From Selaginella moellendorffii (Eukaryota; Plantae; Lycopodiophyta): 64,000 nucleotides of DNA. The stretch covers positions 767,497 through 831,496 of the forward strand of contig NW_003314293.1 in assembly GCF_000143415.4 (NCBI RefSeq). Reading direction: 5' to 3'. The position numbers and the translations under genes were made by a program. Below are positions 15,525 through 64,000 of the stretch, piece after piece. Position 1 is the first letter of the stretch, and every line of letters starts with the position of its first letter. The notes under the pieces are model-generated. The model was not told where the DNA came from and ran no database searches. It was given only the letters and a program-made list of their open reading frames with translations.

Positions 15525-16392
15525 TCAAGCTTTGGTGGCCAGCATTGCTGTTGCAACTCCAGCGATTCCAACGGTGAGAGCAATGCTTCCTCCATACTTG
15601 GCTCCAAACTCAGCAAAGTTGACGCAGGAATCCATGGCGGCATAGCCCTCTGCGTAGATTTCCTTGCTGACGATGTTGTAGATGGCGCGAAGTGGAGCGA
15701 GCACGGCCTGGTATGCGTATGGGAGGTACTCAGTTGCACCAATGGCATCAAAGAGGGAGTCCAGGAACCACTCGCTGTGAGAGGAAGCCTCCACGTTGTT
15801 AACCATGATGTTGCCGGAGAGAGTGAATGGGTTGTAGAGACCCAGCTTCTCCACCTTGGCAAGTTCTATAATTGTCAAAAGTAAGAGCAAAGTCTCAAAA
15901 GAAGTATGATGTTACCAGTGATTTGAGATGATCCCCAGAGAGTTTCTCCAACCTGGAGATCCTTGGCTCGCTTGTACACAAGCTTTCCCTTGGCGTCGAC
16001 TGGGATGAAGTGGCCCTCGCTAAGCTCGATCATGTCTGAGGCGGTGTGGACCTGGATGAACTCGGAGATCACATCGGCGTCCTTGTGGCCGAATGCGTAG
16101 ACATCCGAGAACACGTTTTTGCTCACTGCAACCTTTAGATCTGGCACTTTTATGGGCTTTCGAGAAACTTAAGAGCAATATAATACCTTGTCTCCAACTT
16201 TGAGATCTCTCATGAGTTTGAGGTCGCCGTTATACATTTGGACGGTGGCATCGCCTTTGCAAACATAAAGCCTGTGATTGGCTGTAAAATCGCTTGCAGA
16301 TTCTTACCTGGGAAACATGAGGTGTTGGTCGCTAGAACAACGCTAGCAAGAACAGCGAAGAGAGAAGTAGCAAAGAAAAAAGTGTGAGCCAT
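15525..16392 (-). CDS. Secreted Hedgehog-related Hint (Hog) domain protein, 236 aa; exons 16392-16308, 16254-16187, 16132-15916, 15865-15525
   Basis: Signal peptide, then TNTS-CFPGDATVQMYNGDLKLMRDLKVGDKV...FSDVYAFGHKD...FIQVHT..IELSEGHFI...RAKDLQVGE...GLYNPFTLSGNIMVNNVEAS. All Hedgehog-type Hint blocks are present. Three GT-AG introns (53, 54, 50 nt) keep the frame. Confidence 0.9.
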
Positions 16393-43469: not shown

Positions 43470-45801
43470 AGGTTCGCACGTTTGGAATGAATATGCAACA
43501 CATTTCACAGCGCTATAGGCTGTTCTCCATGGGAGATGCTGCAAAGGAATGCTCGTGGGGTTCCTCAACAGATCATTGTACTGAAACCAATGACCGAAGT
43601 GTTGGTCCCAGCCGTTGAAACTTATGCGGAGCAGCTCCGCCAAGGTTGGTCTAAAGCTACCGAGGCGATGGGCAAAGCTCAGGATAGGTATCGACGTGAT
43701 AAGGATCAGCATCGTCGGAATGTATCCTATCAAGTGGGAGATCAGGTGTGGCTATCTTACCGAAACTTGAACATTAAGGGTTCTTTGTCTCGGAAGCTCT
43801 TGCCGAGATATGTTGGACCCTATCGGGTGCTAAAACGCATTGGTGATGTATCCTATCAGTTGGATCTGCCTGTGGAGATGTCCAATGTTCATAATGTATT
43901 TCATGCCAATCTATTGGCTCCTTACACCATGGATGTTGCACGTCAACGGGAGATTCGTCCACTGCCAGATGTTGTGGATGGTGAACCTGAATATGAAGTC
44001 GAAGCTATTTTGGATTCACGCTGGCTTAAACGTGCCAAACGTCAGGTCCCGGAGTATCTAGTTAAGTGGAAAGGTTACCCAACTTGTGAATCAACTTGGG
44101 AGCCTCTTAGTAATCTTAGCCATGCTCGTGAGCTTGTCACGGAGTATGAGAATAGTAATAAAGCTTAGCTTTTATAAATCTTGTAATAAATCTTGCAAAT
44201 TAATAAAGTAATATCTATTTCTGTAAATCAAAGTGTCATTTCTCTCGTTCGTCAGTACTTGGGTCAGTTTTGGCAGGCTGACTTCGGCACTTCGGTGCAT
44301 GGGTCCAATCCATAACCATGGGGATAACTATTATAGACTGATCACAAGTCCCCGCCTCTCTCTCGATGACTCACTTTTGATAAAGGGGCGTGGTCGTGTA
44401 AACAACTTAATCTGCCAGTTTATAATAGTTGTCTAAATCTTCCCGATGGGGTTGATTTCTTGCTCAGGGGACGTTGGGCCTCTGGCCTTCTCCCTATGTC
44501 CCTGCGGGCAGGGATGTATCATTCCTTTGTAAGCCGAGTGGTACTTGGAGCAGCAAGGGTGGTTAACTCTGTTAGTCATTTCCTTGTCGGTGACGGCCGG
44601 AGGGTGTTTGAGTCTTAGCGTCTTTGGACGTAGAGGAGAGGTTGTTCCATCACTCATTTAAGTTGGTGTGTTTCCCACATAGTGTGCTTTCTGTTAACTT
44701 TTGGAGTTGTTTCCTTGACGGTTTGCTAGACTCGGGTATGCATCGACGAGGACGTCGATCTTCCCCAAGGGGGGGAGAGTGTCGCGAATGTGACTTTGGG
44801 TATCGAAAGATACTTGTCGACCAGTCCTTACGGGCACTCTTTCCTTACTGCTATGAAGGCAGGAGGTCGGTACTGCTGGTTCCCTTTATTGGCCCCTCTT
44901 GTCCAAGTGTTAGTAAACTAGACTTAGCATCTGTATTTGGCCGGATGAGCATAAGGACGGAATTCCTAAGTGTCTATTTGGCCAAGCATACTTGGCCCGG
45001 CTTTTTAGTTCTCTTTTGCTCTGTCTTGCACTGGCTTGGCAAGAACCCTCACGTATTGAGACTAGTCCCTCAATATCACCGGATGATAGCTTACTGTGTC
45101 TGCCAAACACCCTCGCTATCACTCCCTTTGTGTTGGTCTCATTTCGGTCCCAAATGCTATTTATGGAAAGTGTCTAGATTAGCTCATTTGGCATATCTAC
45201 GGAATGTAGAGGTCGGCCTGAACCCAATGGTGTTCGTCCCGTGTCCAAATTTGCAATCTAAGGACATTCCATATTTAGTAAGTTTCGGACTTGTCCCAGA
45301 GACTAACTCCTGGCACTAAGGGAGGCTTGGGGTGAAAGCCCAAAGCGTGTGTCCCTCAAGGGGGGGGGGGGGGGGGGGGCTATAGGGGGTTCCAAATGTA
45401 TAGTAGGGATAGTGGTTGGAATGCATGTCCGACCACCTGAGACATTAGTTTGGCTCCTGCTGGGCTGTGTCGCTCCTTGTTCTGCGTCCGGCTTGGGTCT
45501 AAGCCCAAGCTCCACGCTGCTCTAGTCGGTGGAGTACCCTCCTTCTTGCGTTAGGCCACCGGTATGCCAAAATCGTGCCAGACTCCGTCTGACACCATTT
45601 TGCGTGCAAGTGCTGGATACGGGGAGCTGGTGCTCGTGGGATTGTACCGGACCCTTGTTTCATAGAGCAATGGGCTTGGAGTTCGGCTCCAAATTCAGGT
45701 GCGCTACAGTCTAGCAATATTGACTTCCTGCCATTGTGGCAAAATATTCGAAAGGACTTGCTGACAGATAACTTTCGATACCCAAAATCACATTCATGAC
45801 A
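43470..45801 (+). mobile_element. 5'-truncated Ty3/gypsy chromovirus: integrase C-terminus, chromodomain, PPT and 3' LTR (44780-45801)
   Basis: ORF 43536-44168 contains SRKLLPRYVGPYRV...VHNVFH...[11 protein letters not shown]...EYLVKWKGYPTCESTWEP. PPT AAGGGGGGGAGAG at 44767-44779 is followed by TG...CA. Confidence 0.85.
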
Positions 45802-48637: not shown

Positions 48638-49325
48638 GGCCTTGGGCCACCAAGAGGCCCAAGGTAGAGCTTGGGTCGGCCACCTAGCCACCTAGGGGGC
48701 CGAGGTTATTCAAATAACCAAAGGGCCAAGGTTATTTGAATAACTTCAGCCCTTCGAGCCACTAAAGTGCCCAAGGTTGAGTTCAAGCTAGCCACCTCAG
48801 GCACTTTGGCCACTTGGGGGGCTAAGGTTATTCAAATAACCAATAGAGAAAAAGTTATTTAAATAATTTTGGCCCCTCGGGCTACCAAAGTGCCCAAGGT
48901 TAAACTTGGGCTGGCCACCTCAAGCACTTTGGCTACTAGGGGGGCCTGAAGTTATTCAAATAACCAAGAGGCTGGGGCTATTTGAATAACCTTAGCCCCT
49001 TGGGCTACCAAAGTGCCTAAGGTGGAACTTAAGCCGACCATCTCAAGTACTTTGGCTACCTAGGGGGCCAAGGTTATTCAAATAACCTTGGCCCCTTAGG
49101 CCATCAAATTGCCCAAAGTCAAGTTTGGGCCAACCACCTCAAGCACTTTGGCCACTATGGGGGCCAAGGTTATTCAAATAACCTTGGCCTCTCGGGCCAC
49201 CAAAGTGCTTGAGGTCGAGCTCAAGCCAGCCACCTCAGGCACTTTGGCCACCCAGAGGGCTAAGGTTATCCAAATAACCTTGGTCCCTTGGGCCACCAAA
49301 GTGCCTAAGGTCAAGTTTAGGCCCT
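48638..49325. repeat. Tandem array of ~90-bp palindromic units
   Basis: The near-palindromic core GGCCAAGGTTATTCAAATAACCTTGGCC is flanked by GCACTTTGG...CCAAAGTGC arms and repeated about 6-8 times. Confidence 0.85.
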
Positions 49326-50334
49326 TATTATCTTTATTTAGTTTGACCAATAAAGTTTTATTCTTGTAGAAAAGAAAATTAGTACTACCTAAAAATGTTG
49401 TTTGAAGAATATAAGACGACATGAAATTTTACAAACAATTTCCAGGAATAGATAATTAAACATTTTGTTGAAAGCTAAGCTTTAACTCAAGTGTGTCCCC
49501 TGTGATAAAGATACTACAATTGACATATTTATTAGCACATCAACAAAGATGCAATTGCTTAGAGATCCATCGCCCCCTCTACCCTTCCCCTTCCCGCCTC
49601 CCACCCCCCCTCCCCCTCTTAATAAATATAATTTAAACAAATTAAACAAATATTAAAGAATACAGACTTTGTTTCAAATCAAGATCAGTTTGTGAGATAA
49701 AATCCCTAGGCCCCAAGGTGGAGTTGAAAGGGTGCCACGTGGTAGTGGCCGAAGCGAAAGCCAAATGAGCATAACATGTTTGGACTAAAAGCTCCGACTT
49801 GAAAAGTCAAGAGCGGGAGTGGAACTCACAATGAAGTGCTTGAGGAACAAGTATAAAGCAAGCAATAAGTGAGTCTCTAGAAAAGGGACACAAGAGGACC
49901 AACATATGACACATGGAAGTGTTCGAGATGGAGTCCGAGATGAACCCGAGATGGAGTCCGGGATGGACCTAAGATGGAGTCCGAGATGGACCCGAGATGG
50001 AGTCCGAGATGGACCCGAGATGGAGTCCTAGATGGACCCGAGATGGAGTCCAAGATGGAGTTCGAGATGGATTTGAGATGGAGTCCCAGATGGACCCGAG
50101 ATGAAGTCCAAGATGGACCTGAGATGGAGTCTGAGATGGACCCGAGATAGAGCCCAAGATGGACTCGAGATGGAGCTCGAGATGGAACCGAGACTGAGAC
50201 CGAGACTGAGACTGAGACTGAGACCGAGACTGAGTCCGAGTCCGAGACTGAGACTGAGACCAAGACCGAGTCTGAGTCTAAATCCGAGTTTGAATACTAA
50301 TACAGGCAGTTGGGTGAAAGCCCAAAGGGAAGGG

Positions 50335-50365
<31 letters not shown>

Positions 50366-50666
50366 CGGGGGTGCCTTGGGTTTCCAAAAGCGTCTCGGGC
50401 ATTGGGCTGGGTTGTGCACCCCTTGGAATGTCTTCGCTGTCAAAGGCCGTATTGGAGCCAAGAAAAGCTGCCCTTGGATTTGGAGTTCCAGGATACCCCG
50501 GCATTGCTGCCTGGCATATGGGATGGGAGGAACTAGCGGACTACGATGGACTCGTCGATCCTACGGCCGCTGTTGAGCCCCTGACAACGTCCGCTATAGC
50601 TGCTCCTCCTTTGCGGCCTGTCTGTCTCGCCGGCTCGAGAAACGCTCGGGTTTACCTCTGGAAGGC

Positions 50667-50766
50667 NNNNNNNNNNNNNNNNNNNNNNNNNNNNNNNNNN
50701 NNNNNNNNNNNNNNNNNNNNNNNNNNNNNNNNNNNNNNNNNNNNNNNNNNNNNNNNNNNNNNNNNN
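50667..50766. other. Assembly gap (100 N, true size unknown)
   Basis: Run of N. Confidence 1.
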
Positions 50767-51531
50767 TCCGGGTATCGTTTCCTTAGGGGGGAGGGGGTGC
50801 AGGGGATTCCAAAAGTATAGTAGGGAAAGTGTGGGGATTGGAGCCCAGAGGAGTTTGTTTGGCCAGGAAAGGCTAGTTTGGCCCAAGAAGGTTGTACCTA
50901 AGTGTTGGGTGATGAGCTGACCACTAGGAAGTCTAAGAATAGAGTGAATACGGACAGACAAGTGGGGTAGCTTGGTGAAGTGTTCAAAAGCTGGCTCTAG
51001 TTCCCCCAAGAGATCGAATGGTCGATGCTCTCAGTCCAAGCGTGGGTGGCACTACCTACTTAGATACCTGGCGTGGCTCAACGGAACCTCGCTCTAAACC
51101 CGTGGCTAGAGCACCCAAAGGCGAAAGGCAGGGAGAGTACCCACAAGGCTCACGTAGGGCCATAGTGTTCCAAATAGTTTTCCCAAAGTCCCAGACTGTA
51201 GAAAGGAAGAGGAGTAGTCCTTTGGTGTAGTGACCAAGGATACGGTCATGTGGTGAGGAAGCCCCAGAAGACCATGAGACTTAGTGGTCAGGCCTATGGG
51301 CCTTGATCCAGTGGCAGTGTTAGCGAACACGGCCATGGACAAAAAGGGACTGGTTGGGGATTGGAAAAGGGATATTGGGGAAGGCTATTCCCCATGTCTA
51401 CGAGCATCCTAAGGATGCAAAGGAGTGGATCTAGGATGATCACTCATTGATGGATGGCCTAGTCTTTGAGAGACGGGACTGTGATGCAGGTGGTGTTAGA
51501 CCACCGGTGTGACCAAGATGAAGGGGGTATG

Positions 51532-52681
51532 TGTAAGCCACAAATTTTTCCTTTCCAATTTGCCAGCTTACCTCATCTATCCGTCCAACACTGCCTTGGC
51601 TTTTGCTAAGTCCCTTTGCCAAGGTTCTCGCCTATGGTACCAACTCCTACTTGGTTTCAGCTACTCACTGCACGAGCAACGGAGTGTTAGCCATCCTTCC
51701 ACGGATTCCCAAATCACTCCCAATCCCCCTCCCCGGGTTGGACTGGACTTAAGGTTCGGCTACACTCCCCGCAAGCACAAGCAGCCAAGCACACCAAGCT
51801 TCCAGGTTCCTAACATCCCTTGGTACCACAAGACTTGATCATGGGACCCTCTAAATCCCAAGTCTTGAGTGCAACACTTGCTTCGGGACGCCGGGGCGAA
51901 ACACCGTGGCCTAACGGCCCGGTATGGGTACCTCTCGCCCCCCACTTCCGTCCCGAAGGAAGGCCCAAGCCCCTAGGAAGGGCGAGGACCAATGAGCCGC
52001 ATGGTACTCAAGTGGGGCACCACTCCACATGAGCCGGGAGCACCGCAATCGGTTTCCCTTTCGGGAGTGGGAGCTGCTCTTGAGCACTTCCTTGGATGGC
52101 CCCTCCGGCACCAACCAAGTCCATGCTCACTCCCACCCAAGGCCCCTCGGTCCCAGTCCCAACCTCAAGTCAGTTTGGGAGCCCCACTGGAGAGTCCCTT
52201 CTAAACTGGTTCCTGGACCTCACTATCCCTACTATACTTTTGGAACCCCCTGCAGCCCCCCCCCCCCCTGGGGGACGCACGCTTTGGGCTTTCACCCCTT
52301 GACCCGTATTAGTATTTGGACTTAGTCTCTGGCTCGATCTCGGATCCGATTTCGGATCCGACTTCGGATTCGGTCTCGGACTCGATCGCGGACTCGATCT
52401 CGGACCCGATCTCGGGCCCGACCTCGGACTCGACTTCGGACTCGGTCTCGGACCCGATTTCGGATCTCGGACTCCGTCTCGAACTCGGTCTCGAACTCGG
52501 ACTCGAACTCGGTCCCCGAGTCGGTCTTGGACTCGATTCCGGACTCTATCTCGAACTCGGTCCTAGAGTCGGTCTTGGACTCGATCTTTGACTTGGTCCC
52601 ATCCGATGAACTCCTTGTCATTTTGGTCATGCTTTCGGGGTTCCCTTAGCCTACGACACCTCGGCGAGTTGGTTCCTTACA
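51532..52681 (-). repeat. 3' LTR of the young chromovirus (1150 bp)
   Basis: Matches 57920-59068; by eye only one substitution and a 1-nt difference in a C-run. Confidence 0.95.
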
Positions 52682-53087
52682 ACTCCACCACCCATAGAAG
52701 AAGTTCGATGCCCACATCGAACGTCTCTTTTTTATCCTACGACTTGTTGACCATGTCTCCGGGGGCATCCCCCCACTTAGCGGTGTGCCTAAGTTAGCCT
52801 CCCCGGCCAAGAGCTCATGACAACGGAATATAGGTGTCCCTATACTCCACCCCTCACCACGCCCTAGTATGGGGTCGGGACTTGAACCCAGCCTTGCTTT
52901 ACTAGGGGGTTGGGACTCAAACCCAACCTCCGTAGAATACGTCTACGGATTCGACATCCCCGCAGGGAGTCGGGCGTAGCTCCCTACGCCTGGTCGACCT
53001 AGCTAACCCATGCTAATTAGCTCACCTTCGGCGCGCCTTCGGGTCCCAACATATGCCACTTGCTCAACTTTGCAAATTGATATATTT

Positions 53088-56000
53088 TTAATTGAACTTT
53101 GCATAAGTACATAGAGTTCTGCCTTGCAGAAATTCCTCCACTAGATCTCGCGCGTTCGCTAGGTTCTCCTCCGGTTCCCATGTTGCTTCGCAGTGTGGAA
53201 ATCCTTTCCACTTCACATGGAACTCTCTCACCTCGCGTCCTTGTCGCTTGCTCTTGCGCGCATTGAGGATGGCCTCGACTTCGTATTCCTCTTCCCCTTG
53301 GATAACCTCAGGTAAAGGTCTTACTTGGTCCTTGCGAAGCGGATCCTCAAAGTACGGCTTGAGTAAGTTCACATGGAACACTGGGTGCATCTTCCCCATC
53401 TCTCGAGGAAGTCGGAGTCGGTAAGCCACTTTACCGATTCGTGCCTCAATCTCGTAAGGCCCCGCGAACCTGCTTAAGGAACTCAAGATCAATTCATTTA
53501 CAGGAATACATGCATTTTTACCTTTGGGTCAACTTTCGGCTGATCCCACTTGGTAGCCTAAGGTTCTTGGTGTTCAGCCACACCTTCTCCCCAGCTTGGA
53601 ACTCTACGTCCCGGCGCTTTAAGTTCGCGTACTTGGTTTGCCTTTGTTGAGCCCGTTCCAAGGAATCCCTCACTAGATTCCAAATGTTGAGTCTTTCCGC
53701 CGTGAATGCCTCCACTGCGGGTAACTCTCCATGATACTCGGCCACGCCGAGTTCCACAGGACCTTCAATAGCTCGCCCATTGATGACTTCCCATGGACTC
53801 ACCCCGATACTCGAATGTGGTGAGTTGTTATAACACATTTCCGCAAGTCCCAAATGACTTACCCAATCGGTCTGGTCTCCCGAGACATAGCATCGCAAAT
53901 AATCCTCCAGCTGCCTATTCACCCTTTCCGTTTGTCTGTCTGTCAAGAAGTGTTAGGACCACCAAACTTGACTTAATACCCCATACCTGTCTGTGGGTGA
54001 TAGGCTGTGCTGAATTTCAACTTGGTGCGATACTGTTCCAGGAGGGTCCTCCAGAACCTACTAGTGAAGATCTTATCTCGATCTGAGATAATCTCCTCTG
54101 GCCTTCCCCGCACTCGAACCACTTGTTCGAAGAACAGTTTCGCCACACCTTCCGCATCCACCTCCGTTGTGGTGGGTATGAAATGTGCCATCTTCGAAAA
54201 TCGGTCCACCACCACGAATATCGCATCGAACCCCTCGCTTGGGGGTAGTCCCGTGATGAAGTCCATCGTGAGACATTTCCACGGACGATCTGGAATTGGG
54301 ATGCTTTGCAACAAGCCCCCACTAGCCTTAGTCACGGCTTTGACCTGCTGACATGTTGGACATGTCTTTACATAGTCTTGGACGTCCTTAGCCATATCTG
54401 GCCAATGGTACTTCCTCTTGAGTAAGCCCATCGTCTTGGGCACTCCGCCGTGTCCTGCAAGAGGTCCGTCATGACACTCTTCTAAGGCTACCTTCCTTAG
54501 TCCACCTTCTGGAACATACACCCTCGTTTGCTTGTAATAAATGAGTCCATTGCGTTCCGCATAGCCCGTTTTCTCTTCCGTTGGCGGCTCACCTCTCTGG
54601 TGAGCTTCCCGTGCCTCCAGATTCCTCAACAACACTTCTTGTGCTAGACCATCGTTCTCATATGCTGTCCGCACATCGTCCCAGAATGTTGCTGTTGCGC
54701 TGGAGATCGCCAACCTCAAGCTCGCTTTTCGACTTAGCGCATCTGCCACGATGTTGCTCTTCCCAGGCTTGTACAGAATCTCGCAATCAAACTCGGCCAA
54801 GGCATTGGCCCACCGACCTTGTTTCCCTCTCAGGTCGGGTTGTGACAAGAAGTGTTTCGTTGCCACATTGTCCGTGTAAACCTTGAAGTGTCTCCCAAGG
54901 TAGTGTCGCCACTCCTTGAGCGCCTTGACCACCGCAAACAATTCCTTCTCGTGGGCAGGCCACTTCCGTTGAGCCTTGTCCAGCTTCTTCGAGAAGAACG
55001 CTACTGGATGGTTGTCTTGCTTCAAAACTGCGCCTAACGCAAAGTCCGAAGCATCCGTGTCTACCTCAAAGTCCTTACCAAAGTCCGGTAATGCCAACAC
55101 CGGAGCCTTCCTCAACTTCCCTTTGAGGTGGACGAATGCCGCCTCGCATTCCGCTGTCCATACCATCTTCCCTTTTCCCGTTTGATCCATTAAGGGCAGG
55201 GCTACTCTCGAATAGTGTCTGATAAACTTTCGATAGTAGTTGCATAGCCCCAAGAACGCCCTCAACTCATGTACATTCGATGGTCGCTCCCATTCCTGGA
55301 TCGCTTGGACCTTCTCCGGATCCACCTTGAGCCCGTCCTGGCCCACCACATGCCCGAGAAACTTTACCTCTTGCTGAGCAAAGTCACATTTGCTCTCTTT
55401 AGCATACAGTTTATGTTTCCTTAGTTTCTCAAACACCTTCGCCAAGTGTTCGGCATGTTCCTCTAGCGTCTCGCTATAGATCAGGATGTCGTCAATATAG
55501 ACGACCACAAAGTGATCCAGATAGGGTACAAAGATGTGGTTCATCAACGCCGAAAACGTTGCCGGCGCATTGCACAGCCCAAAGGGCATCACCAAAAACT
55601 CAAAGCTCCCATACCTCGTTCGACAGGTTGTCTTCTCGACATCTTCCTCGGCTACCCTGATCTGGTAGTATCCTGACCTTAGGTCAATCCTCGAGAAGTA
55701 TTTTGCCTTTCCCAACCTATCGAACAGGTCCTCAATCCTTGGCAACGGGTACTTGTTCTTCTTGGTATACTTGTTGAGCAACCGGTAATCTATGCACATG
55801 CGCATAGATCCATCTTTCTTTTTCACAAATAATACCGGCGCCCCATACGGCGACTTGCTCAACCTAACATACCCTTTGCCCACCAACTCCTCTAGTTGGC
55901 ACTTGAGCTCCTTGAGTTCTTTTTCGTTCAAACGATAGGGGGGACGAACCACCGCCTCAGCGCCCTCGACAAGCTCAATCTTATGTTCTATCGGTCGTGC

Positions 56001-57860
56001 GGGGGGCAACCCCACCGGTAGCTCCTCCGGCATGGTATCCTGGAATTGGTCCAACACTCGCTGGATTACTAAAGGCACTTCTTCCGTTCTTGTCTTTTTG
56101 TCACTCTTCACCGAGAGTAAGCACAAAAAGGCTGCCTTAGTTCCTTTAGTGAGTTGTCCTCTCGTGGACACCAGGTTCAAGCATGACTCTTTGGCCTTGC
56201 TTTGCCCTACCTTTAGATCCTGGGCCTCCACCCTAGATCTTCTTCCTTGGGCATTCGCCAATACCACAAGGTTCCTACCTTGTCCATGCAGGGCTACCAC
56301 GAACCGATTAAACCAATCCATTCCGAAGATCACGTCAAATCCCGCCATATCCAAGACGGTGAAATCCATGTCCACTTTCCATGTCCCCACTTCGACTCTC
56401 GCTTGTCGAAGTACCTCATCGGTGCTTTGGCTACCCTGAACAAACTCTATAGTCCTTGGTTCGCCTAGCCGCTGCACCGTTAGTCCGGCTTGCCGGACTA
56501 TGTCTGCAGCCACAAAATTATCCGAAGCACCCGTGTCAATAAGGATCTTAACAAAGCTACCTCCGAGCTTCCCTCGGAGGGCTAGTAGATGTCGCGAACG
56601 ACTCTCTACCAAAGTTGCTCGTGTAATGAGTAACTTTGAGTTAGGGACTGGATCACATACCTCAATTTGGACTTCACCCGACTTGATGGCCATATTGGCT
56701 CTGGCCTTCTTCGGGTAGGGACATTCCCTCGAGAAGTGTCCCGCTTCGCCGCAGTTGTAGCATACGTTGTTTCCCACGCTGCTATACGACTTGACCTTCT
56801 TATCCGTGGGTTTGTCCTTTTTCGCTTGACTCCCCCACGTACTCGCTCGCTGGCCACCGGATTTGCCTTTCCGGAACCCCGAGGACTCATTCTTAGAGAA
56901 ACTCCTTTTGAATTTCCCCTTGCTATACGTTCCCCTTGGTTTGGCCCCTTTGCTAAATGTGGATCCCGACCCCGTCGTGTTCCCCTTTCGCAGGTTATCG
57001 TTGAAATGCACCTTGATGGCCGCATCCAACGCTTCCTTGTAGTTGGTCGGGTTCCACCTCATCACCTCGCCGCGAGCCCAGGTTTGCAAACCTGATATGA
57101 AGGCATGGAACGCATCCATATCCCCCATGTCCGTGACAAGTATCCTCTTTGCCATGAACCCATTCACATATTCCTGGATGGTTCCTGTCTGTTTCAGCCT
57201 ACTCAGTTCATCCCTCAGATGCAGAGTGGCATTCGGAGGAACATATGTTGCGCGGATCCTCACCTTCATCATGTCCCAAGTGACCACCGGTCCTTCGTTG
57301 GCCTCCGTTGTTCTCCACCAAGACTTGGCATTATCTGCCAAGTATGGTTTTGCACATGGGACCTTCTCCGAGCTTGGTAACCGCAACGCTCGGAAGTAGT
57401 CCTCCATATCGTAAAACCAATCCTCCACAACCTTATAGTCGTTCACTCCCTTGAACACCGGTGGGGGCTTTGGTTTGTACTTGGGAACTGCCTGAGGGAC
57501 TGATTCCACTTCGGTCTGTTCGACCTTGTCTGGTTTTGCCTCAGTCCCTGCCGAAGGGTCCGCACCTTCTGCGCTGCCAGCATCCGCAGTCTTTCGCTTT
57601 TTCTTCCGCTTCTCGTCACGCTTTAACTTGCGTACGAGAGTCTCTAGCAGGGCATTGGTCTGTGCCAACTGTCCTTCTAGCACGTCCAATCGAGCCTTGG
57701 ACGACCGAACCTCGCCACCGGACTCCTGTTTGGAAGTTTCCTCACTGGAGTCCTCCTCATGCAAGGATTCCTCATCCATAGCCTCTTGTTCAACCGGAGG
57801 CTCCAGCTCCGGCGGAGGTTCCGTCTCCGCCTGGGTTCGCTTACGCCCTGCCCTTGCCAT
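53088..57860 (-). CDS. Gag-Pol polyprotein (Gag-ZnK-PR-RT-RH-IN-chromodomain); predicted exons 57860-53987, 53939-53522, 53469-53088 (1557 aa if spliced)
   Basis: [14 protein letters not shown] knuckle, LIDTGAS protease, YIDD RT, DASD RNase H, H-H-CPTC, D,D(35)E, GPY and a chromodomain (EYEVEAIL...VKWKGF...TWEPEENL). Two GT-AG interruptions. Confidence 0.93.
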
Positions 57861-57903
57861 CTCCCAGCAATCCGCCTCTATCCTTCGCTAGAACTGAGAT
57901 AAA

Positions 57904-57916
57904 GGCTCCGATACCA
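57904..57916 (-). promoter_or_regulatory. Primer-binding site (tRNA-iMet)
   Basis: TGGTATCGGAGCC versus the canonical TGGTATCAGAGCC (one G:U pair). Confidence 0.9.
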
Positions 57917-57919
57917 AAT

Positions 57920-59068
57920 TGTAAGCCACAAATTTTTCCTTTCCAATTTGCCAGCTTACCTCGTCTATCCGTCCAACACTGCCTTGGCTTTTGCTAAGTC
58001 CCTTTGCCAAGGTTCTCGCCTATGGTACCAACTCCTACTTGGTTTCAGCTACTCACTGCACGAGCAACGGAGTGTTAGCCATCCTTCCACGGATTCCCAA
58101 ATCACTCCCAATCCCCCTCCCCGGGTTGGACTGGACTTAAGGTTCGGCTACACTCCCCGCAAGCACAAGCAGCCAAGCACACCAAGCTTCCAGGTTCCTA
58201 ACATCCCTTGGTACCACAAGACTTGATCATGGGACCCTCTAAATCCCAAGTCTTGAGTGCAACACTTGCTTCGGGACGCCGGGGCGAAACACCGTGGCCT
58301 AACGGCCCGGTATGGGTACCTCTCGCCCCCCACTTCCGTCCCGAAGGAAGGCCCAAGCCCCTAGGAAGGGCGAGGACCAATGAGCCGCATGGTACTCAAG
58401 TGGGGCACCACTCCACATGAGCCGGGAGCACCGCAATCGGTTTCCCTTTCGGGAGTGGGAGCTGCTCTTGAGCACTTCCTTGGATGGCCCCTCCGGCACC
58501 AACCAAGTCCATGCTCACTCCCACCCAAGGCCCCTCGGTCCCAGTCCCAACCTCAAGTCAGTTTGGGAGCCCCACTGGAGAGTCCCTTCTAAACTGGTTC
58601 CTGGACCTCACTATCCCTACTATACTTTTGGAACCCCCTGCAGCCCCCCCCCCCCTGGGGGACGCACGCTTTGGGCTTTCACCCCTTGACCCGTATTAGT
58701 ATTTGGACTTAGTCTCTGGCTCGATCTCGGATCCGATTTCGGATCCGACTTCGGATTCGGTCTCGGACTCGATCGCGGACTCGATCTCGGACCCGATCTC
58801 GGGCCCGACCTCGGACTCGACTTCGGACTCGGTCTCGGACCCGATTTCGGATCTCGGACTCCGTCTCGAACTCGGTCTCGAACTCGGACTCGAACTCGGT
58901 CCCCGAGTCGGTCTTGGACTCGATTCCGGACTCTATCTCGAACTCGGTCCTAGAGTCGGTCTTGGACTCGATCTTTGACTTGGTCCCATCCGATGAACTC
59001 CTTGTCATTTTGGTCATGCTTTCGGGGTTCCCTTAGCCTACGACACCTCGGCGAGTTGGTTCCTTACA
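57920..59068 (-). repeat. 5' LTR of the young chromovirus (1149 bp)
   Basis: Matches 51532-52681 and is followed on the minus strand by ATT and the PBS. Confidence 0.95.
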
Positions 59069-61419
59069 GTATGGCCTTAGTGTAATGGGCTGATATGTCG
59101 GTGGTACCTTAGGGTGTCGGTCATGGGATCGGACACGTGGAGCACTTGGACCAAGTGCAAAGGTTGAGTGGCATGGATGTCATTCTTAGGGATAGCAAGC
59201 CCCAAGTCCGGAATAGGACTTACGGAGGTTATGAGTGAGACTCCTTCAAGTGGTCGGAGGTGTGGTTAAGTGACTAAAATAGAATGGAAAAATTAGTCAC
59301 TTACAATTTGGTATCAAAGCTATTCCTTAGTCTGACTACTATTGGTGCTCAAGTATATCACCATTGGTGTTGGCATCGGAAGGTCCTAGGAGTGGGCCTA
59401 TCCTTGAGGAGTAGTAGGTCAGGAAGACATACCTCTCCACTATAGTTCATGTGGGAATTTATAGGCAAGATGGTGGATAGAAAAGGGGTAATAAAGGAAC
59501 GACTTTGGGATCTTGGGAACAGTATAAGGTTTTCCTTAGAGAGTTGAGTATGTGATCCAAATGAACGTTTGACCCAGCAAACTGGCTAATGTAATTGTGG
59601 TAAACAACTATAGTTGGGATCACGGGAAGATAAAGACTCCAAAACAATAAAGGGGTCACAAGATTATCCTTATATAGTTGAGATTGGTGCTCATGAACTT
59701 AAGACTAGAATTAATGACCGTAGGAGGTCAAATACAGAAGAGGACACAAATCCTTGAAATGGTAGCCAGGGTTACCCTTAATAAATGCTAAAACAACCCA
59801 AGGGATTTGGGGTGTGCTCAGAGGATGAGTCAGTATTCTCATCATATGGACGGATAGTCCTAAGGGGCAAAAGCAGCCCACAAGGAATGGAAAATAATCG
59901 AGTGTCGAAGTAACACTTGCATGAATGGTCTTTATAAGTGGGACATGAATACAAGAAGTTGTATTCTAACGAGCTAGCATCTCAAAATGGGACCTTATAG
60001 GTCGTCGATTAGTGAAGTCCAAAAAACTAGATGATTCGAGTCAAGAAATGGTCCTAAAGAACTGGTGGAAGCATTTGGACTGAGGTGTGTTGTACCCCAC
60101 GAAGGATGGGGAGGATCATAATATCCAAGTATGAGAACAATGGGTATCTCATTGATGGTAGAATGAGCCATACTAAAGTTGTGGGAAAGAGGTTCCCAGA
60201 GGAAAGCAATTTTGACATAAAGTTGTGTGTAAACTATATGGTGTAATATGAACGAACAGTTGGTATGAGAAACGACTATATTGGTCTTGGCAAAAACCTA
60301 GACACAAGTAAGAAGTGTTATAAAGGTAGGCTCGTGAAGCTGATGGTGTGGAAACACCGAATATGCCAAAGCATGATGCCTTGAGGTCCAGTTGGTGGGT
60401 TCACGAGAACTCCTTCCCAAAGGAATCTTAATGGAATGAGAATGGCATAGCCTAAGCTGGAAGGCATATAGTTGGAGTGTGGTGACCCAGATAATGATGG
60501 AGGTGTGAAAGCATCAGCAATGAGTTGTAGGACTTGACTACTATGAGGCAACTAAACAAAAGGTGTAAAATAATTAGTTAAACTAGTAGAAGGTAGCTAC
60601 CTAAGACTTCTTAATGGCATAAATAAGTTAAATATACCCTTATAGGGGATAGAATTGTTTATGTTGCGATATAGTAAGTTAATGTCGTAAAAGGGAATGC
60701 TCATTGTCAAAGAGGCCATCATTGGGACACCCAAACACTCTAAAACACCAGAAGGTGGTGTTTGGTGTCGCAAGGGCAATAGATAAGGCCCAAGGGATTA
60801 AGTCCCTAGCGAATAATGGATAGAAGATGCTATCTAAATGTCCAAAGTTGCGGAGATGAGAGAAGACTATCTACCCGAATTGGACAAAGCCAAAAATGAA
60901 ATTTTGGCAAAGCTAGTGATAAGCATATAAAGGCCCATAAATAGCAACGTTAATCCCAGTGTGTGGAATTATAAGATGACCATACCCGGATTGAGGAACC
61001 ACTCCTTAAGCTATCGGATAGGTTCATCTCTATGAATATTTGCTAAGGCATGGTAGAAAATGCAAAGTTATCCTCCTAGTCTGGAGGCGAATAACCGAAG
61101 GAAATGTGTAAGGCCGAAAACAAGTAATAAGGGGATAGAACCAAACCATAAGAATCGAAGAGCATAACCAAGAGTGGTTATGTCAATTGAGAGTGGAAAA
61201 TCAAATGGGCGCTCAAGCATGTTATTACTAGCAACTGTGGTGCCATGGAGAGTCTAAAGCATGGAATTGTCCATGTTAGACCATATGGCAATTAGAAAAC
61301 TTGCAAAAGGAGAGGCCTTAACAAGCTAAGGGATAGAGTTCTTTCAAGGTTCCCAAAGACAATTTTAGGTAGCTTAATACCTAAAAAGCCAAATGTATAT
61401 GGTTTATAGAACGTGTGAA

Positions 61420-61446: not shown

Positions 61447-63062
61447 CTTGAAGTTTGTCATAAGGCAATGCTATCAAGGTTGGGGAAGTAATTCCCAAGT
61501 GTTCAAAGGGATGGCTTTAAACGAAAGTCGATGGTCAAGGACTTTCACGCTTATGTATGAAACCATGTTACGTTGGTCAAATGACTTACTAAGCAAGATT
61601 GGCAAGTCAAGGGAACAAATCCCCTAGTTGAAGGTGCTAATTTCAAAAAGGGTGGCCCATGGGGCCAAGCATGGAGGAGTCCATGCATGATCACAAACTT
61701 GTTAAGTGAGAGGACTTGGTAATGTGGAGGAACTAGGTTCTTAAGCTGTGATTTGTAGCATGCTTTAAGTATAAGTTGGTGCATCAGCATAGGGAGACAC
61801 GCTAGGCATCCTGTGTGATACCATCTGTAGATGTATATACGGAGGTTGGGTTCGAGTCCCAACTCACTAGGGCGAGGTGATGGTTTGGAATATGAGGACA
61901 CTCATTTTTTGGTGGTCATGGACTCTTAGTAAGTAGACTAGCTTGGGCACACCGCCAAGCAAGGGATGCCCCAGAGTCATGATGTACGGTTAGATTGCTT
62001 AGTGTGAAAAATCAATATATTTAAATTGAACACTTTGGTGCAAATGGCACCAAGGATGTGGTGAATGAGATGGGGACACCCAGTCTTAGTTGCTATGGAC
62101 CCTTGGCCAGAAGGGCTGACTTGGGTGCACCGTCGAGTATGGGGGATGCCTCTGGGGTTATGGTAAACAATTTAAAGGTTTAGAAGACTTAATATCTATT
62201 AGCAAACCTATTAAGGTGCCAAGGTTTGATCACTAGGTGATCTTATGGCTAAAACAAAGATAAGGTTCTTATGAAGTTAAAGGATAAGGTTCCTAATTCA
62301 AAGTGTTGATTTGAACTATTGATGATGATGTGGCTTGGTTAAAGTGACCAAATGGGAAGGACACCTAAGGGAAATGAGTTATGTCAATGCGATGGCATAG
62401 TGAGTTTGAAGAAAGTAGTCTTTATAAGAGACCCATGGGAGGGTCACAAAGTTGGGCCGTGGATAGAACCCACAATAGAAGATGTTAAAAAGACATACTA
62501 GGGGTGAACACCCTCTAGACTTGGCAAAACAAAGTCTTTACTATAAAACTGAAAGGACATCTTGAGAATGGAAGTAATGATCCTTTATTGCTAGGTGCAA
62601 TAATCAAGGATAGGAGCAAAAAACTAGTGGCTAAGAAAAGAGCCATGGGAATCATGGGATAGAACCCAAATGGCACAGTTAGGCCAGGAACACTAATGTG
62701 TTGAATGCTAATAAATTGTGGGAAAGACAATGTGTTTCCAAGGATGGATTCCCAATTGCTCTAATTTAGCAAAAGTGGAAGCTCCAAGAGAGGGAGCAGT
62801 AAGGTAGCCAAATGATAGGGCCATGAATTGCCCTAGCACAAATTATAATAACTGGAACTTAGTGCCAAATGTGGCACAAAATAGAAAAGAGGACAATGGT
62901 GCCCTCAAGTAAAGAACTTCCTAGGATGGAGAAGTGGAGAAAAAAAGTCAAGAGCGGGAATGAAACTCCCAACGAAGTGCTTGAGGAATAAGCACGAAGC
63001 AAACAATAAGTGAATCTCTAGAAAAGGGACACAAGAGGACTAGCATATGACATGTGGAAGTA

Positions 63063-63410
63063 TCCGAGATGGAGTCCAAGGAGTCCAAGATGGACCCGAG
63101 ATGGAGTTCGAGATGGACCCGAGATGGAGTCCGACATGGACCCGAGATGAAGTCCGACATGGACCCGAGATGGAGTCTGAGATGGACCCGAGATGGAGTT
63201 CGAGATGGACCTAAGATGGAGTCCAAGATGGACCCGAGATGGAGTCCGAGATGGACCCAAGATGGAGTCCGAGATGGAGTCTGAGATGGAACCAAGACTG
63301 AGACCGAGACCGAGACCGAGACTAAGTCCAAGTCCAAGTCCGAGACCGAGACCAAGACTGAGTCCGAGTCTGAGTCTGAGGCTGAGTCCAAGTCCGAGTC
63401 TGAGTCCGAA
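63063..63410 (+). repeat. 11/12-bp (GAGATGGACCC / GAGATGGAGTCC) then 6-bp (GAGACC / GAGTCC) tandem array within the LTR; equivalents at 40793-41172 and 49924-50292, related arrays at 52325-52590 and 58712-58977
   Basis: Directly visible periodicity. Confidence 0.9.
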
Positions 63411-64000
63411 TACTAATACAAACTGTTGGGTAAAAGCCCAAAGCAATCGTCCCCCATGGGGGGGGGGGGGGCGGGGGGCAGGTGCAAGGGGTTCCAAAAG
63501 TATAGTAGGGAGAGTCTAGGGGTTGGAGCCCAGTGGAGCCAATTTGGCTAGGAAAGGCCAGTTTGGCCCAGGAAGGCTGTACCCAGGTGTTGGGTGATGA
63601 GCTGACCACTGGGAAGTCCAACACTAGAGTGAATACGGACCGACAAGCAGGGTAGCTTGGTGAAGTGTTCAAGAGCCAGCTTTACTTCCCCCGGGAGATC
63701 AAATGGTTGATGAGTCCAAGTGTGGGTGGCACTACCTACTCAGATACTTGGCATGGCTCAACAGAACCTCGCTTTAAACCCGTGGCTAGAGCACCCAAAG
63801 GCAAAAGGCAGGGAGAGTACCTAGGTGGCTCGCGTAAGGCCACGGTGTTCCAAAATGTTGCCCCAAAGTCCCAGACTGTGGGAAGGAAGAGGAGCAGACC
63901 TCTGGCATAGTGACTAAGGACATAGTCACATTGTGAGGAAGTCTCAGAGGACCATGGGACTTAGTGGTCAGGCATGTGGGCTTTGATCTAGTGGCAGTGT

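What the first reader, a model, noticed from the sequence alone, without database searches (positions are those of the whole stretch)
53470..53986. Recently transposed LTR retrotransposon whose integrase is split by two spliceosomal-type introns
Seen: the Gag-Pol ORF of the young chromovirus stops twice inside integrase, each time at a short GT...AG insert. Insert 1 (53986-53940, 47 nt) is CAGACAG|GTATGG...TCCTAACACTTCTTGACAG|AC, with a CTAAC branch-point match. Insert 2 (53521-53470, 52 nt) is CAAAG|GTAAAA...TTAAGCAG|GT. Both carry an in-frame stop and shift the frame. Exact removal gives [12 protein letters not shown], with exactly 35 residues between the second D and the catalytic E, and KLTQ-R-FAGPY, in one 1557-aa ORF. 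Sizes are close to host introns in this window (50-54 nt in the Hint gene). The related relic at 43536-44168 is uninterrupted at site 2 (RKLLPRYVGPY). Established: reverse transcription of spliced RNA erases introns; the retained introns I know of (Ogre PR/RT intron, copia gag splicing, Penelope) lie elsewhere. Inference: with near-identical LTRs, both introns probably passed through retrotransposition. The element would then package unspliced RNA, which encodes Gag-PR-RT-RH and a catalytically dead integrase, and make active integrase-chromodomain only from doubly spliced mRNA: a splicing-gated integration step.
Basis: partly seen in the sequence, partly recalled or inferred. Interest (0 to 1): 0.95.

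Follow-up and report, generated by a model that had tools for sequence, protein, structure and literature searches.

The report
Retrotransposon needing splicing to make integrase
A very recently inserted jumping gene of the spikemoss Selaginella (the published SM1-Galahad family) carries real host-type introns inside its integrase gene, plus two more upstream. They are cut out exactly in RNA-type data yet kept in the DNA copies, which is unusual for an element that copies itself through RNA.

Summary
The element at 51532-59068 (minus strand) is a complete Ty3/gypsy chromovirus. Its LTRs differ by one substitution and one indel, and it has a GTATG target-site duplication.

- **The two inserts:** the gag-pol frame stops at a 47-nt GT..AG insert (53940-53986, phase 1) and a 52-nt one (53470-53521, phase 2). 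The three coding pieces, aligned separately to nine or ten intact chromovirus polyproteins and to the Ty3 sequence of PDB 7q5b, abut with one split codon at each site. The catalytic Glu lies after insert 1.
- **RNA evidence:** contigs of two RNA-type runs from two studies skip both inserts exactly, once together in a single 2.5-kb contig.
- **Two further introns:** the same run skips a 66-nt leader intron that removes the LTR end and primer-binding site. It also skips a 157-nt intron over the protease active site, which leaves a Gag-only frame.
- **Selection:** family variants sit at third codon positions (29 of 34), and the register shifts at each intron.

The family is the published SM1-Galahad (2012), described as three ORFs with "no intact copy"; introns were not recognised. 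This scan has already found the same architecture on many other pieces of this genome.

Still inferred: the RNA label of the two runs is a guess, which splices occur together on one molecule is unknown, and the packaging and gating steps are untested.

The parts
57920..59068 (-). 5' LTR (1149 nt, TG..CA)
   Evidence: Offset comparison and self-BLAST give 99.8% identity to the 3' LTR. Ends read.
51532..52681 (-). 3' LTR (1150 nt)
59069..59073 (.). Target-site duplication GTATG; the other copy is at 51527-51531
57904..57916 (-). Primer-binding site TGGTATCGGAGCC (tRNA-Met type)
   Evidence: Sequence. The published SM1-Galahad has a 13-bp tRNA-Met PBS.
57894..57959 (-). Leader intron, 66 nt, GAG|GTAAGC...CTCAG|. 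It removes the last 40 nt of the 5' LTR and the PBS. The acceptor lies 33 nt before the gag ATG.
   Evidence: X17 contig 17 lies on 56965-57893 and 57960-58071. Sequence.
53987..57860 (-). Exon A: Gag (CCHC), protease, RT, RNase H, integrase zinc finger and core up to HPQT (both catalytic Asp)
   Evidence: Pfam scan; ORF list
56504..56660 (-). Gag/protease intron, 157 nt, phase 0 after codon 400, GAG|GTATGT...TGCAG|. It encodes the protease D-T-G motif when retained. When removed, the frame reads ACA TAG, giving a Gag-only product of 401 aa.
   Evidence: X17 contig 16 lies on 55741-56503 and 56661-56977. Sequence.
53940..53986 (-). Integrase intron 1, 47 nt, phase 1, CTAAC 13 nt before the acceptor
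   Evidence: X17 contig 15 and X15 contig 10 skip exactly 53940-53986.
53522..53939 (-). Exon B: the rest of the integrase core, with the catalytic Glu at 53926-53928
   Evidence: Pieces aligned separately to intact polyproteins and to Ty3 (7q5b)
53470..53521 (-). Integrase intron 2, 52 nt, phase 2
   Evidence: X17 contig 15 and X15 contig 9 join 53467 to 53520. This is the same product as removing 53470-53521, because of the AG/GT ambiguity.
53088..53469 (-). Exon C: SH3-like integrase C-terminal domain, chromodomain and stop codon
   Evidence: Pfam SH3_Tf2-1 and Chromo; alignment
52683..52693 (-). Polypurine tract GGGTGGTGGAG

Best explanation
This is a young, structurally complete copy of the Selaginella chromovirus family SM1-Galahad. 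Its transcript carries four U2-type GT-AG introns.

**Shown**
- All four segments are removed exactly in RNA-type assemblies.
- All four are present in this DNA copy, which inserted very recently.
- Unspliced RNA encodes Gag-PR-RT-RH plus an integrase that ends 4 codons into intron 1. That product lacks the catalytic Glu, the SH3-like domain and the chromodomain.
- Removing the two integrase introns puts the three coding pieces in one frame.
- Removing the 157-nt intron deletes the protease active site and ends the frame two codons later, leaving Gag only.
- Removing the leader intron deletes the primer-binding site.

**Inferred**
- The element sorts its RNA by splicing. Fully unspliced RNA, the only form with a PBS, is the template for reverse transcription, which is why the introns are inherited.
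- RNA spliced over the protease supplies extra Gag.
- RNA that keeps the protease segment but loses both integrase introns supplies the complete integrase-chromodomain.
For: - **Splicing (table 8):**
  - X17 contig 15 (2500 nt) lies on 53141-53467, 53520-53939 and 53987-55739.
  - X15 contigs 9 and 10 show each integrase skip separately, and come from a second study.
  - X17 contigs 16 and 17 skip 56504-56660 and 57894-57959.
- **Splice sites:** all four skipped segments have AG|GT donors and CAG| acceptors. The three short introns are T-richer (0.30-0.35 against 0.20) and lower in GC than the exons.
- **X17 and X15 are not genomic DNA libraries:** they give 4-6 pieces at depth 2-11. The DNA run X1 gives about 72,000 pieces of this high-copy family.
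- **Seamless junctions:** exactly one subject residue separates pieces A/B and B/C in intact homologues and in Ty3, PDB 7q5b (A ends at 1267, B residue 2 at 1270).
- **Selection:** 29 of 34 listed variants fall on third codon positions of each exon's own frame (binomial p = 6e-10). The register shifts at each intron.
- **Recent insertion:**
- **Family level:**
  - The published consensus has the same 1295-aa ORF plus two short ORFs.
  - No intact single-ORF copy was found among hundreds of copies.
  - The sister family SM2-Galahad has one 1577-aa ORF.
Against: - The RNA label of X17 and X15 is the tool's guess.
- The raw RNA-seq run X22 gave only 48 reads, too few to show a junction.
- Contigs are short, so which splices occur together on one molecule is unknown. 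In X17 the majority path is spliced at the protease intron, and that form cannot make integrase.
- The protease and leader splices each rest on one contig of one run.
- No census of intron presence across genomic copies could be made. In the DNA run 42 joints were not listed and some were not counted, so rare intronless DNA copies are not excluded.
- DNA depth in the two bins that hold the integrase introns is about 20-27% below their neighbours. This is within the bin-to-bin scatter, but it is also what partial intron absence would give.
Confidence: 0.8

Rival explanations
1. Intron-bearing copies are defective passengers. A few intronless master copies, or the sister family SM2-Galahad, supply integrase in trans. 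The intron-free contigs are transcripts or DNA of such masters.
For: - Rare intronless DNA forms cannot be excluded, where some joints were unlisted or uncounted.
- DNA depth is slightly lower in the bins that hold the integrase introns.
- SM2-Galahad has an uninterrupted integrase and is abundant.
Against: - The same run's contigs also lack the leader segment (LTR end plus PBS) and the protease active-site segment. A replicating DNA master could not lack either.
- No intronless junction is among the best-supported DNA joints.
- The 2012 study found no intact copy among hundreds.
- Exons B and C show third-position-biased variation in their own frames.
Confidence: 0.08
2. The inserts are private or family-level degenerative insertions in a dying family. 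The integrase C-terminus is no longer made.
For: - ORF1 ends in the insert, and the published description treated the family as lacking an intact copy.
Against: - The inserts are skipped exactly in RNA-type contigs of two studies.
- The junctions are seamless against intact homologues.
- The downstream exons are open and under codon-position constraint.
- This insertion is very recent.
Confidence: 0.04
3. The downstream integrase parts are reached by translational recoding (frameshift or stop read-through) on unspliced RNA, not by splicing.
For: Many LTR elements use frameshifting between gag and pol (general knowledge).
Against: - Each insert holds stops soon after the junction and would need two separate recoding events across 47 and 52 nt.
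- The insert residues have no counterpart in homologues.
- Spliced forms are observed.
Confidence: 0.02

Closest known systems
SM1-Galahad, chromovirus of Selaginella moellendorffii (Novikova et al. 2012, PMC3350952)
   Same: It is the same family. The published element is about 7.5 kb, with LTRs over 1 kb ending TG..CA, a tRNA-Met PBS, a 3885-bp ORF of 1295 aa, and two short downstream ORFs, the last of which carries a group I chromodomain. It has hundreds of copies.
   Different: The paper reports no intact copy and no TSD, and does not mention introns. This copy has a TSD, near-identical LTRs and RNA-type evidence that the ORF breaks are introns.
Ogre (Ty3/gypsy, legumes), with an intron between protease and RT shown to be spliced (Steinbauerova et al. 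2008, cited in PMC12786077)
   Same: Both are plant Ty3/gypsy elements that keep a spliceosomal intron in their DNA copies and need splicing to join pol coding parts.
   Different: Ogre has one intron, upstream of RT, in a different lineage (Tat/Ogre). Here two mini-introns lie inside the integrase of a chromovirus, and there are also leader and protease introns.
Ty1/copia Gag-only mRNA made by splicing around the protease (Drosophila copia, BARE, Arabidopsis EVADE shGAG; Oberlin et al. 2017, PMC5580714; Chang et al. 2013, PMC3735527)
   Same: The 157-nt intron spans the protease active site, and its removal leaves a Gag-only frame. The logic is the same as shGAG.
   Different: That strategy was reported as specific to Ty1/Copia, and no conserved pattern was found in Arabidopsis Ty3/Gypsy. 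Here it sits in a single-ORF Ty3/gypsy element and rests on one contig.
Retroviral leader splice donor (general knowledge)
   Same: A donor in the 5' leader separates spliced mRNAs from the genomic RNA that is packaged.
   Different: In retroviruses the major donor lies downstream of the PBS, and spliced RNAs lose the packaging signal. Here the donor lies in U5 and the intron removes the PBS itself.

Membership tests
Ty3/gypsy chromovirus, family SM1-Galahad | LTRs over 1 kb with TG..CA ends, a tRNA-Met PBS, a PPT, and a size of about 7.5 kb | tested here: met
   The element is 7537 bp with LTRs of 1149 and 1150 nt. PBS is TGGTATCGGAGCC and PPT is GGGTGGTGGAG. This matches the published description.
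Ty3/gypsy chromovirus, family SM1-Galahad | Domain order Gag-PR-RT-RH-IN with a C-terminal chromodomain | tested here: met
   Pfam hits: Retrotrans_gag, zf-CCHC, RVP_2, RVT_1, RT_RNaseH, Integrase_H2C2 and rve on exon A; SH3_Tf2-1 and Chromo on exon C.
Ty3/gypsy chromovirus, family SM1-Galahad | A 1295-aa first ORF followed by two short ORFs, the last with the chromodomain | tested here: met
   ORFs of 1295, 142 and 134 aa against the paper's 1295 aa plus two short ORFs. No direct sequence comparison with the published consensus was possible.
U2-type spliceosomal intron | GT..AG ends with consensus-like flanks | tested here: met
   Donors are CAG|GTATGG, AAG|GTAAAA, GAG|GTATGT and GAG|GTAAGC. 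All four acceptors are CAG|.
U2-type spliceosomal intron | Exact removal from RNA while present in DNA | tested here: met
   Contigs of X17 and X15 skip the segments. Listed DNA pieces of X1 span intron 1 (53906-54004). Caveat: the RNA label of X17 and X15 is a guess, and raw reads were too few.
U2-type spliceosomal intron | Removal keeps the coding frame and the homologous residues contiguous | tested here: met
   Frame arithmetic. One split codon at each junction against intact polyproteins and Ty3 7q5b.
U2-type spliceosomal intron | Branch-point motif and U-rich composition | tested here: inconclusive
   Intron 1 has CTAAC 13 nt from its acceptor. Intron 2 and the leader intron have no CTRAY. 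T content is 0.30-0.35 against 0.20 in the exons.
Splice-made Gag-only mRNA (shGAG type) | An intron around the protease whose removal ends the frame after Gag | tested here: met
   The donor follows codon 400, between the zinc knuckle (365-381) and the protease (430-532). The downstream exon reads ACA TAG. The skip is seen in one X17 contig.
Splice-made Gag-only mRNA (shGAG type) | The spliced RNA is translated into excess Gag, coupled to premature polyadenylation | not testable with these tools
   No translatome or 3'-end data were available.
Ogre-type intron-bearing LTR retrotransposon | A single intron between protease and RT in the Tat/Ogre lineage | tested here: not met
   The intron positions differ (integrase, leader, within the protease), and the element is a chromovirus.

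The most novel reading that the evidence does not exclude
SM1-Galahad runs a four-intron programme that assigns each RNA its role.

- The leader intron deletes the primer-binding site, so any RNA that has met the spliceosome cannot be reverse-transcribed. That is why introns inside pol are inherited.
- The protease intron yields a Gag-only message, as in Ty1/copia elements.
- A complete integrase-chromodomain comes only from RNA that is spliced in the integrase but not in the protease.

This would be a retrovirus-like division of labour that arose independently in a plant chromovirus. Integration competence would depend on host splicing.
Probability: 0.45. Interest if true: 0.85.

Novelty: new variant of a known kind. 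Interest (0 to 1): 0.78.

Why it matters
Loss of an intron on passage through RNA is the classic proof of retrotransposition, so an abundant, recently mobile LTR element that keeps introns inside its integrase is unexpected. A 2025 review names only Ogre and EVADE as intron-bearing plant LTR retrotransposons.

If the model holds, three things follow.
- **SM1-Galahad:** it explains why the family was described as having no intact copy.
- **TE annotation:** pipelines that demand one open pol frame will misclassify active families as dead.
- **RNA sorting:** it gives a simple system for asking how a retroelement separates its translated RNA from its copied RNA. That question is still open for single-ORF Ty3/gypsy elements. 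Here the PBS-removing intron would do the sorting.

Tried and rejected
- **Fungal host:** I first assumed a fungus because of the roughly 50-nt introns. Earlier scan notes and the match to the published family point to Selaginella moellendorffii.
- **Other copies inside the window:** there are none at the DNA level. The only relative is a relic of another family.
- **Other genomic or transcript copies through protein searches:**
  - ORF1's integrase region gave only intact elements from other plants, at most 54% identical.
  - ORF2 gave six distant fragments.
  - The protein collection apparently holds no SM1-Galahad, so no copy census was possible.
- **Raw RNA-seq run X22:** 48 reads were laid, too few for any junction. 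This says nothing either way.
- **Intron origin:** the introns have no significant similarity to anything else in the window.
- **Literature:** searches for integrase introns in LTR retrotransposons found no prior description. The library lacks most subscription journals.
- **Kept within the rules:** I did not build a joined or consensus sequence, and I sent no junction-spanning pattern to any search.

Full report
**Anatomy**

On the minus strand, 51532-59068 is a 7537-bp LTR retrotransposon.
- The LTRs (57920-59068 and 51532-52681) differ by one substitution and one single-base indel.
- They end TG..CA and are flanked by a 5-bp duplication, GTATG.
- A tRNA-Met-type primer-binding site, TGGTATCGGAGCC, starts 3 nt inside the 5' LTR. 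A polypurine tract precedes the 3' LTR.
- One substitution in 1149 nt puts the insertion at roughly tens of thousands of years, if angiosperm-like LTR substitution rates apply. No rate for Selaginella was available, so this is an inference.

**Coding pieces**

- The first ORF (53973-57860, 1295 aa) holds Gag with a CCHC knuckle, protease, RT, RNase H, the integrase zinc finger and the integrase core.
- A 142-aa ORF follows, with no Pfam match.
- A 134-aa ORF after that has the SH3-like integrase C-terminal domain and a chromodomain.

**The two inserts**

- I checked the frames by arithmetic and by translating each piece on its own, without joining them.
  - Exon A ends with one spare base. Exon B is open in frame 2, so the split codon is GAC (Asp).
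  - Exon B ends with two spare bases. Exon C is open in frame 1, so the split codon is AGG (Arg).
  - The sum is 1557 codons.
- Read-through from the upstream exon stops after 4 codons in insert 1 and immediately in insert 2.
- I aligned the three pieces separately to ten intact chromovirus polyproteins from other plants and metagenomes.
  - In all nine subjects where the pieces align in order, exactly one subject residue lies between the end of A and the start of B.
  - In the three subjects where the alignment reaches the ends, exactly one lies between B and C.
- Against the Ty3 polyprotein of the solved intasome (PDB 7q5b), piece A ends at residue 1267 (HPQT) and residue 2 of piece B aligns to 1270 (QSER).
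- The catalytic Glu of the D,D-35-E triad therefore lies in exon B, 35 residues after the second Asp. The product of unspliced RNA lacks it.

**RNA evidence**

I laid four runs on 52650-58560.
- Contigs of X17 and X15 come from different studies and are labelled "RNA?" by the tool.
- One 2500-nt X17 contig covers 53141-53467, 53520-53939 and 53987-55739, so both integrase inserts are gone in one molecule-like path.
- X15 shows each skip in a separate contig.
- The 2-nt offset at insert 2 is the AG/GT ambiguity and gives the same product.
- X17 also skips 56504-56660 and 57894-57959.
- On the element's sense strand, all four skipped segments begin GT after an exonic AG and end CAG.
- The three short ones are T-richer and GC-poorer than the exons.

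These two runs behave like transcriptomes, not genomic libraries. They hold 26-31 Mb of contigs and give only 4-6 pieces at depth 2-11 for this family. The DNA run X1 (210 Mb) gives about 72,000 short pieces at enormous summed depth. One of those pieces spans insert 1 in a copy about 6% diverged. No joint at any of the four intron sites is among the best-supported DNA joints, although 42 were not listed and some were not counted.

The one raw RNA-seq run gave 48 reads and is uninformative.

**The two extra introns**

- **Leader intron (66 nt).** Its donor lies in U5, 40 nt before the LTR end. Its acceptor lies just after the PBS and 33 nt before the gag ATG. Spliced RNA therefore lacks the PBS.
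- **Gag/protease intron (157 nt).** It starts right after codon 400, between the zinc knuckle (365-381) and the protease domain (from about 430), and contains the D-T-G motif. Once it is removed, the next codons are ACA TAG, so the RNA encodes a 401-aa Gag only.

Each of these rests on a single X17 contig. Their splice-site quality and their position relative to the domains make a chance genomic deletion unlikely.

**Selection**

Of the 34 variants between the X17 contig and this copy that one search lists, 29 fall on third codon positions of the respective exon's own frame: 17 of 19 in A, 10 of 13 in B and 2 of 2 in C (p = 6e-10).
- Most of these variants are also common among DNA copies.
- The register moves from position mod 3 = 0 to 1 and back to 0 across the two introns.
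- In the continuous unspliced register, the exon B and C variants would fall mostly on second positions.
- Exons B and C have therefore been translated, each in its own frame, while the family diversified.
- The list is incomplete, since 195 differences were not shown.

**Identity and literature**

Earlier scan notes name the genome as Selaginella moellendorffii. The element matches the published SM1-Galahad in five respects:
- a length of about 7.5 kb;
- LTRs over 1 kb with poly-G tracts;
- a 13-bp tRNA-Met PBS;
- an ORF of 3885 bp and 1295 aa;
- two short downstream ORFs, the last with a group I chromodomain.

[quoted passage not shown] The sister family SM2-Galahad has one 1577-aa ORF that includes integrase and chromodomain. 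The relic of another family in this window is also continuous at site 2. The integrase introns therefore look like gains in the SM1 lineage.

- A December 2025 review names only Ogre and EVADE as intron-bearing plant LTR retrotransposons.
- Oberlin et al. 2017 found protease-centred splicing to be a Ty1/Copia feature and saw no conserved pattern in Ty3/Gypsy.
- My searches found no description of integrase introns in an LTR element, within the limits of the library.

**Earlier findings of this scan**

The same architecture has been reported on many other pieces of this genome, often with the identical 517-nt span. Those notes include RNA-type evidence, the PBS-removing leader intron and the protease splice. 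I treated them as leads. Every point used here was re-tested on this copy.

**Mechanism**

- **Shown:** the four segments are spliced out in RNA-type data. They persist in a copy that has just passed through reverse transcription. Their positions have the coding consequences described above.
- **Inferred:**
  - Only unspliced RNA, the one form with a PBS, is reverse-transcribed, which makes the introns heritable.
  - RNA spliced over the protease gives extra Gag.
  - RNA spliced in the integrase but unspliced in the protease gives the complete integrase-chromodomain.
- **Unknown:** which splices go together on single molecules. In X17 the majority path is spliced at the protease intron, and that form cannot yield integrase.

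**Limits**

- Read laying could be called only once, so neither a host-gene control nor a per-base DNA depth across the introns could be obtained.
- No other genomic copies could be fetched.

Noticed in passing
window 49802-51320 and 62943-64000: A direct repeat pair, 85-88% identical, flanks the young element. It has 23-nt tandem arrays (49924-50240, 63080-63290) and a 40-nt poly-G run (50332-50371). An LTR-end plus PBS-like match lies at 59276-59315. This looks like a nested insertion into the LTR of an older, plus-strand Galahad-like element.
   Followed up: partly
window 52333-52587 and 58720-58974: The SM1-Galahad LTR carries a 12-nt tandem array of about 22 copies (CTCGATCTCGGA). It resembles the reverse complement of the 23-nt arrays in the older flanking repeat.
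   Followed up: no
window 53935-53991 and 53466-53526: Both integrase introns are flanked by short direct repeats: GACAG before the donor and at the intron end, and AGGT at both ends of intron 2. The splice consensus partly forces this. It is a weak hint that the introns arose by insertion and not by conversion of coding sequence.
   Followed up: partly
window 58095-58451: Raw RNA reads of X22 (depth about 6, one direction only) and an X17 contig cover this LTR part. They share the same unlike sequence before 58095. The expressed LTR is therefore a variant or lies at another locus (tables 2, 3, 7).
   Followed up: no
window 43497-44147 (+): A relic of a different chromovirus family, 35-57% identical in protein. 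Its integrase C-terminal and chromodomain parts are continuous in one frame at the position of intron 2.
   Followed up: partly
window 15840-16260 (-): A host Hog/Hint-like gene with predicted GT..AG introns of about 46-61 and 50 nt, the same size class as the element's integrase introns. This is from sequence only.
   Followed up: partly
window 48687-49323: Tandem arrays of 123-nt and 96-nt units lie just upstream of the older repeat. Their nature is unknown.
   Followed up: no
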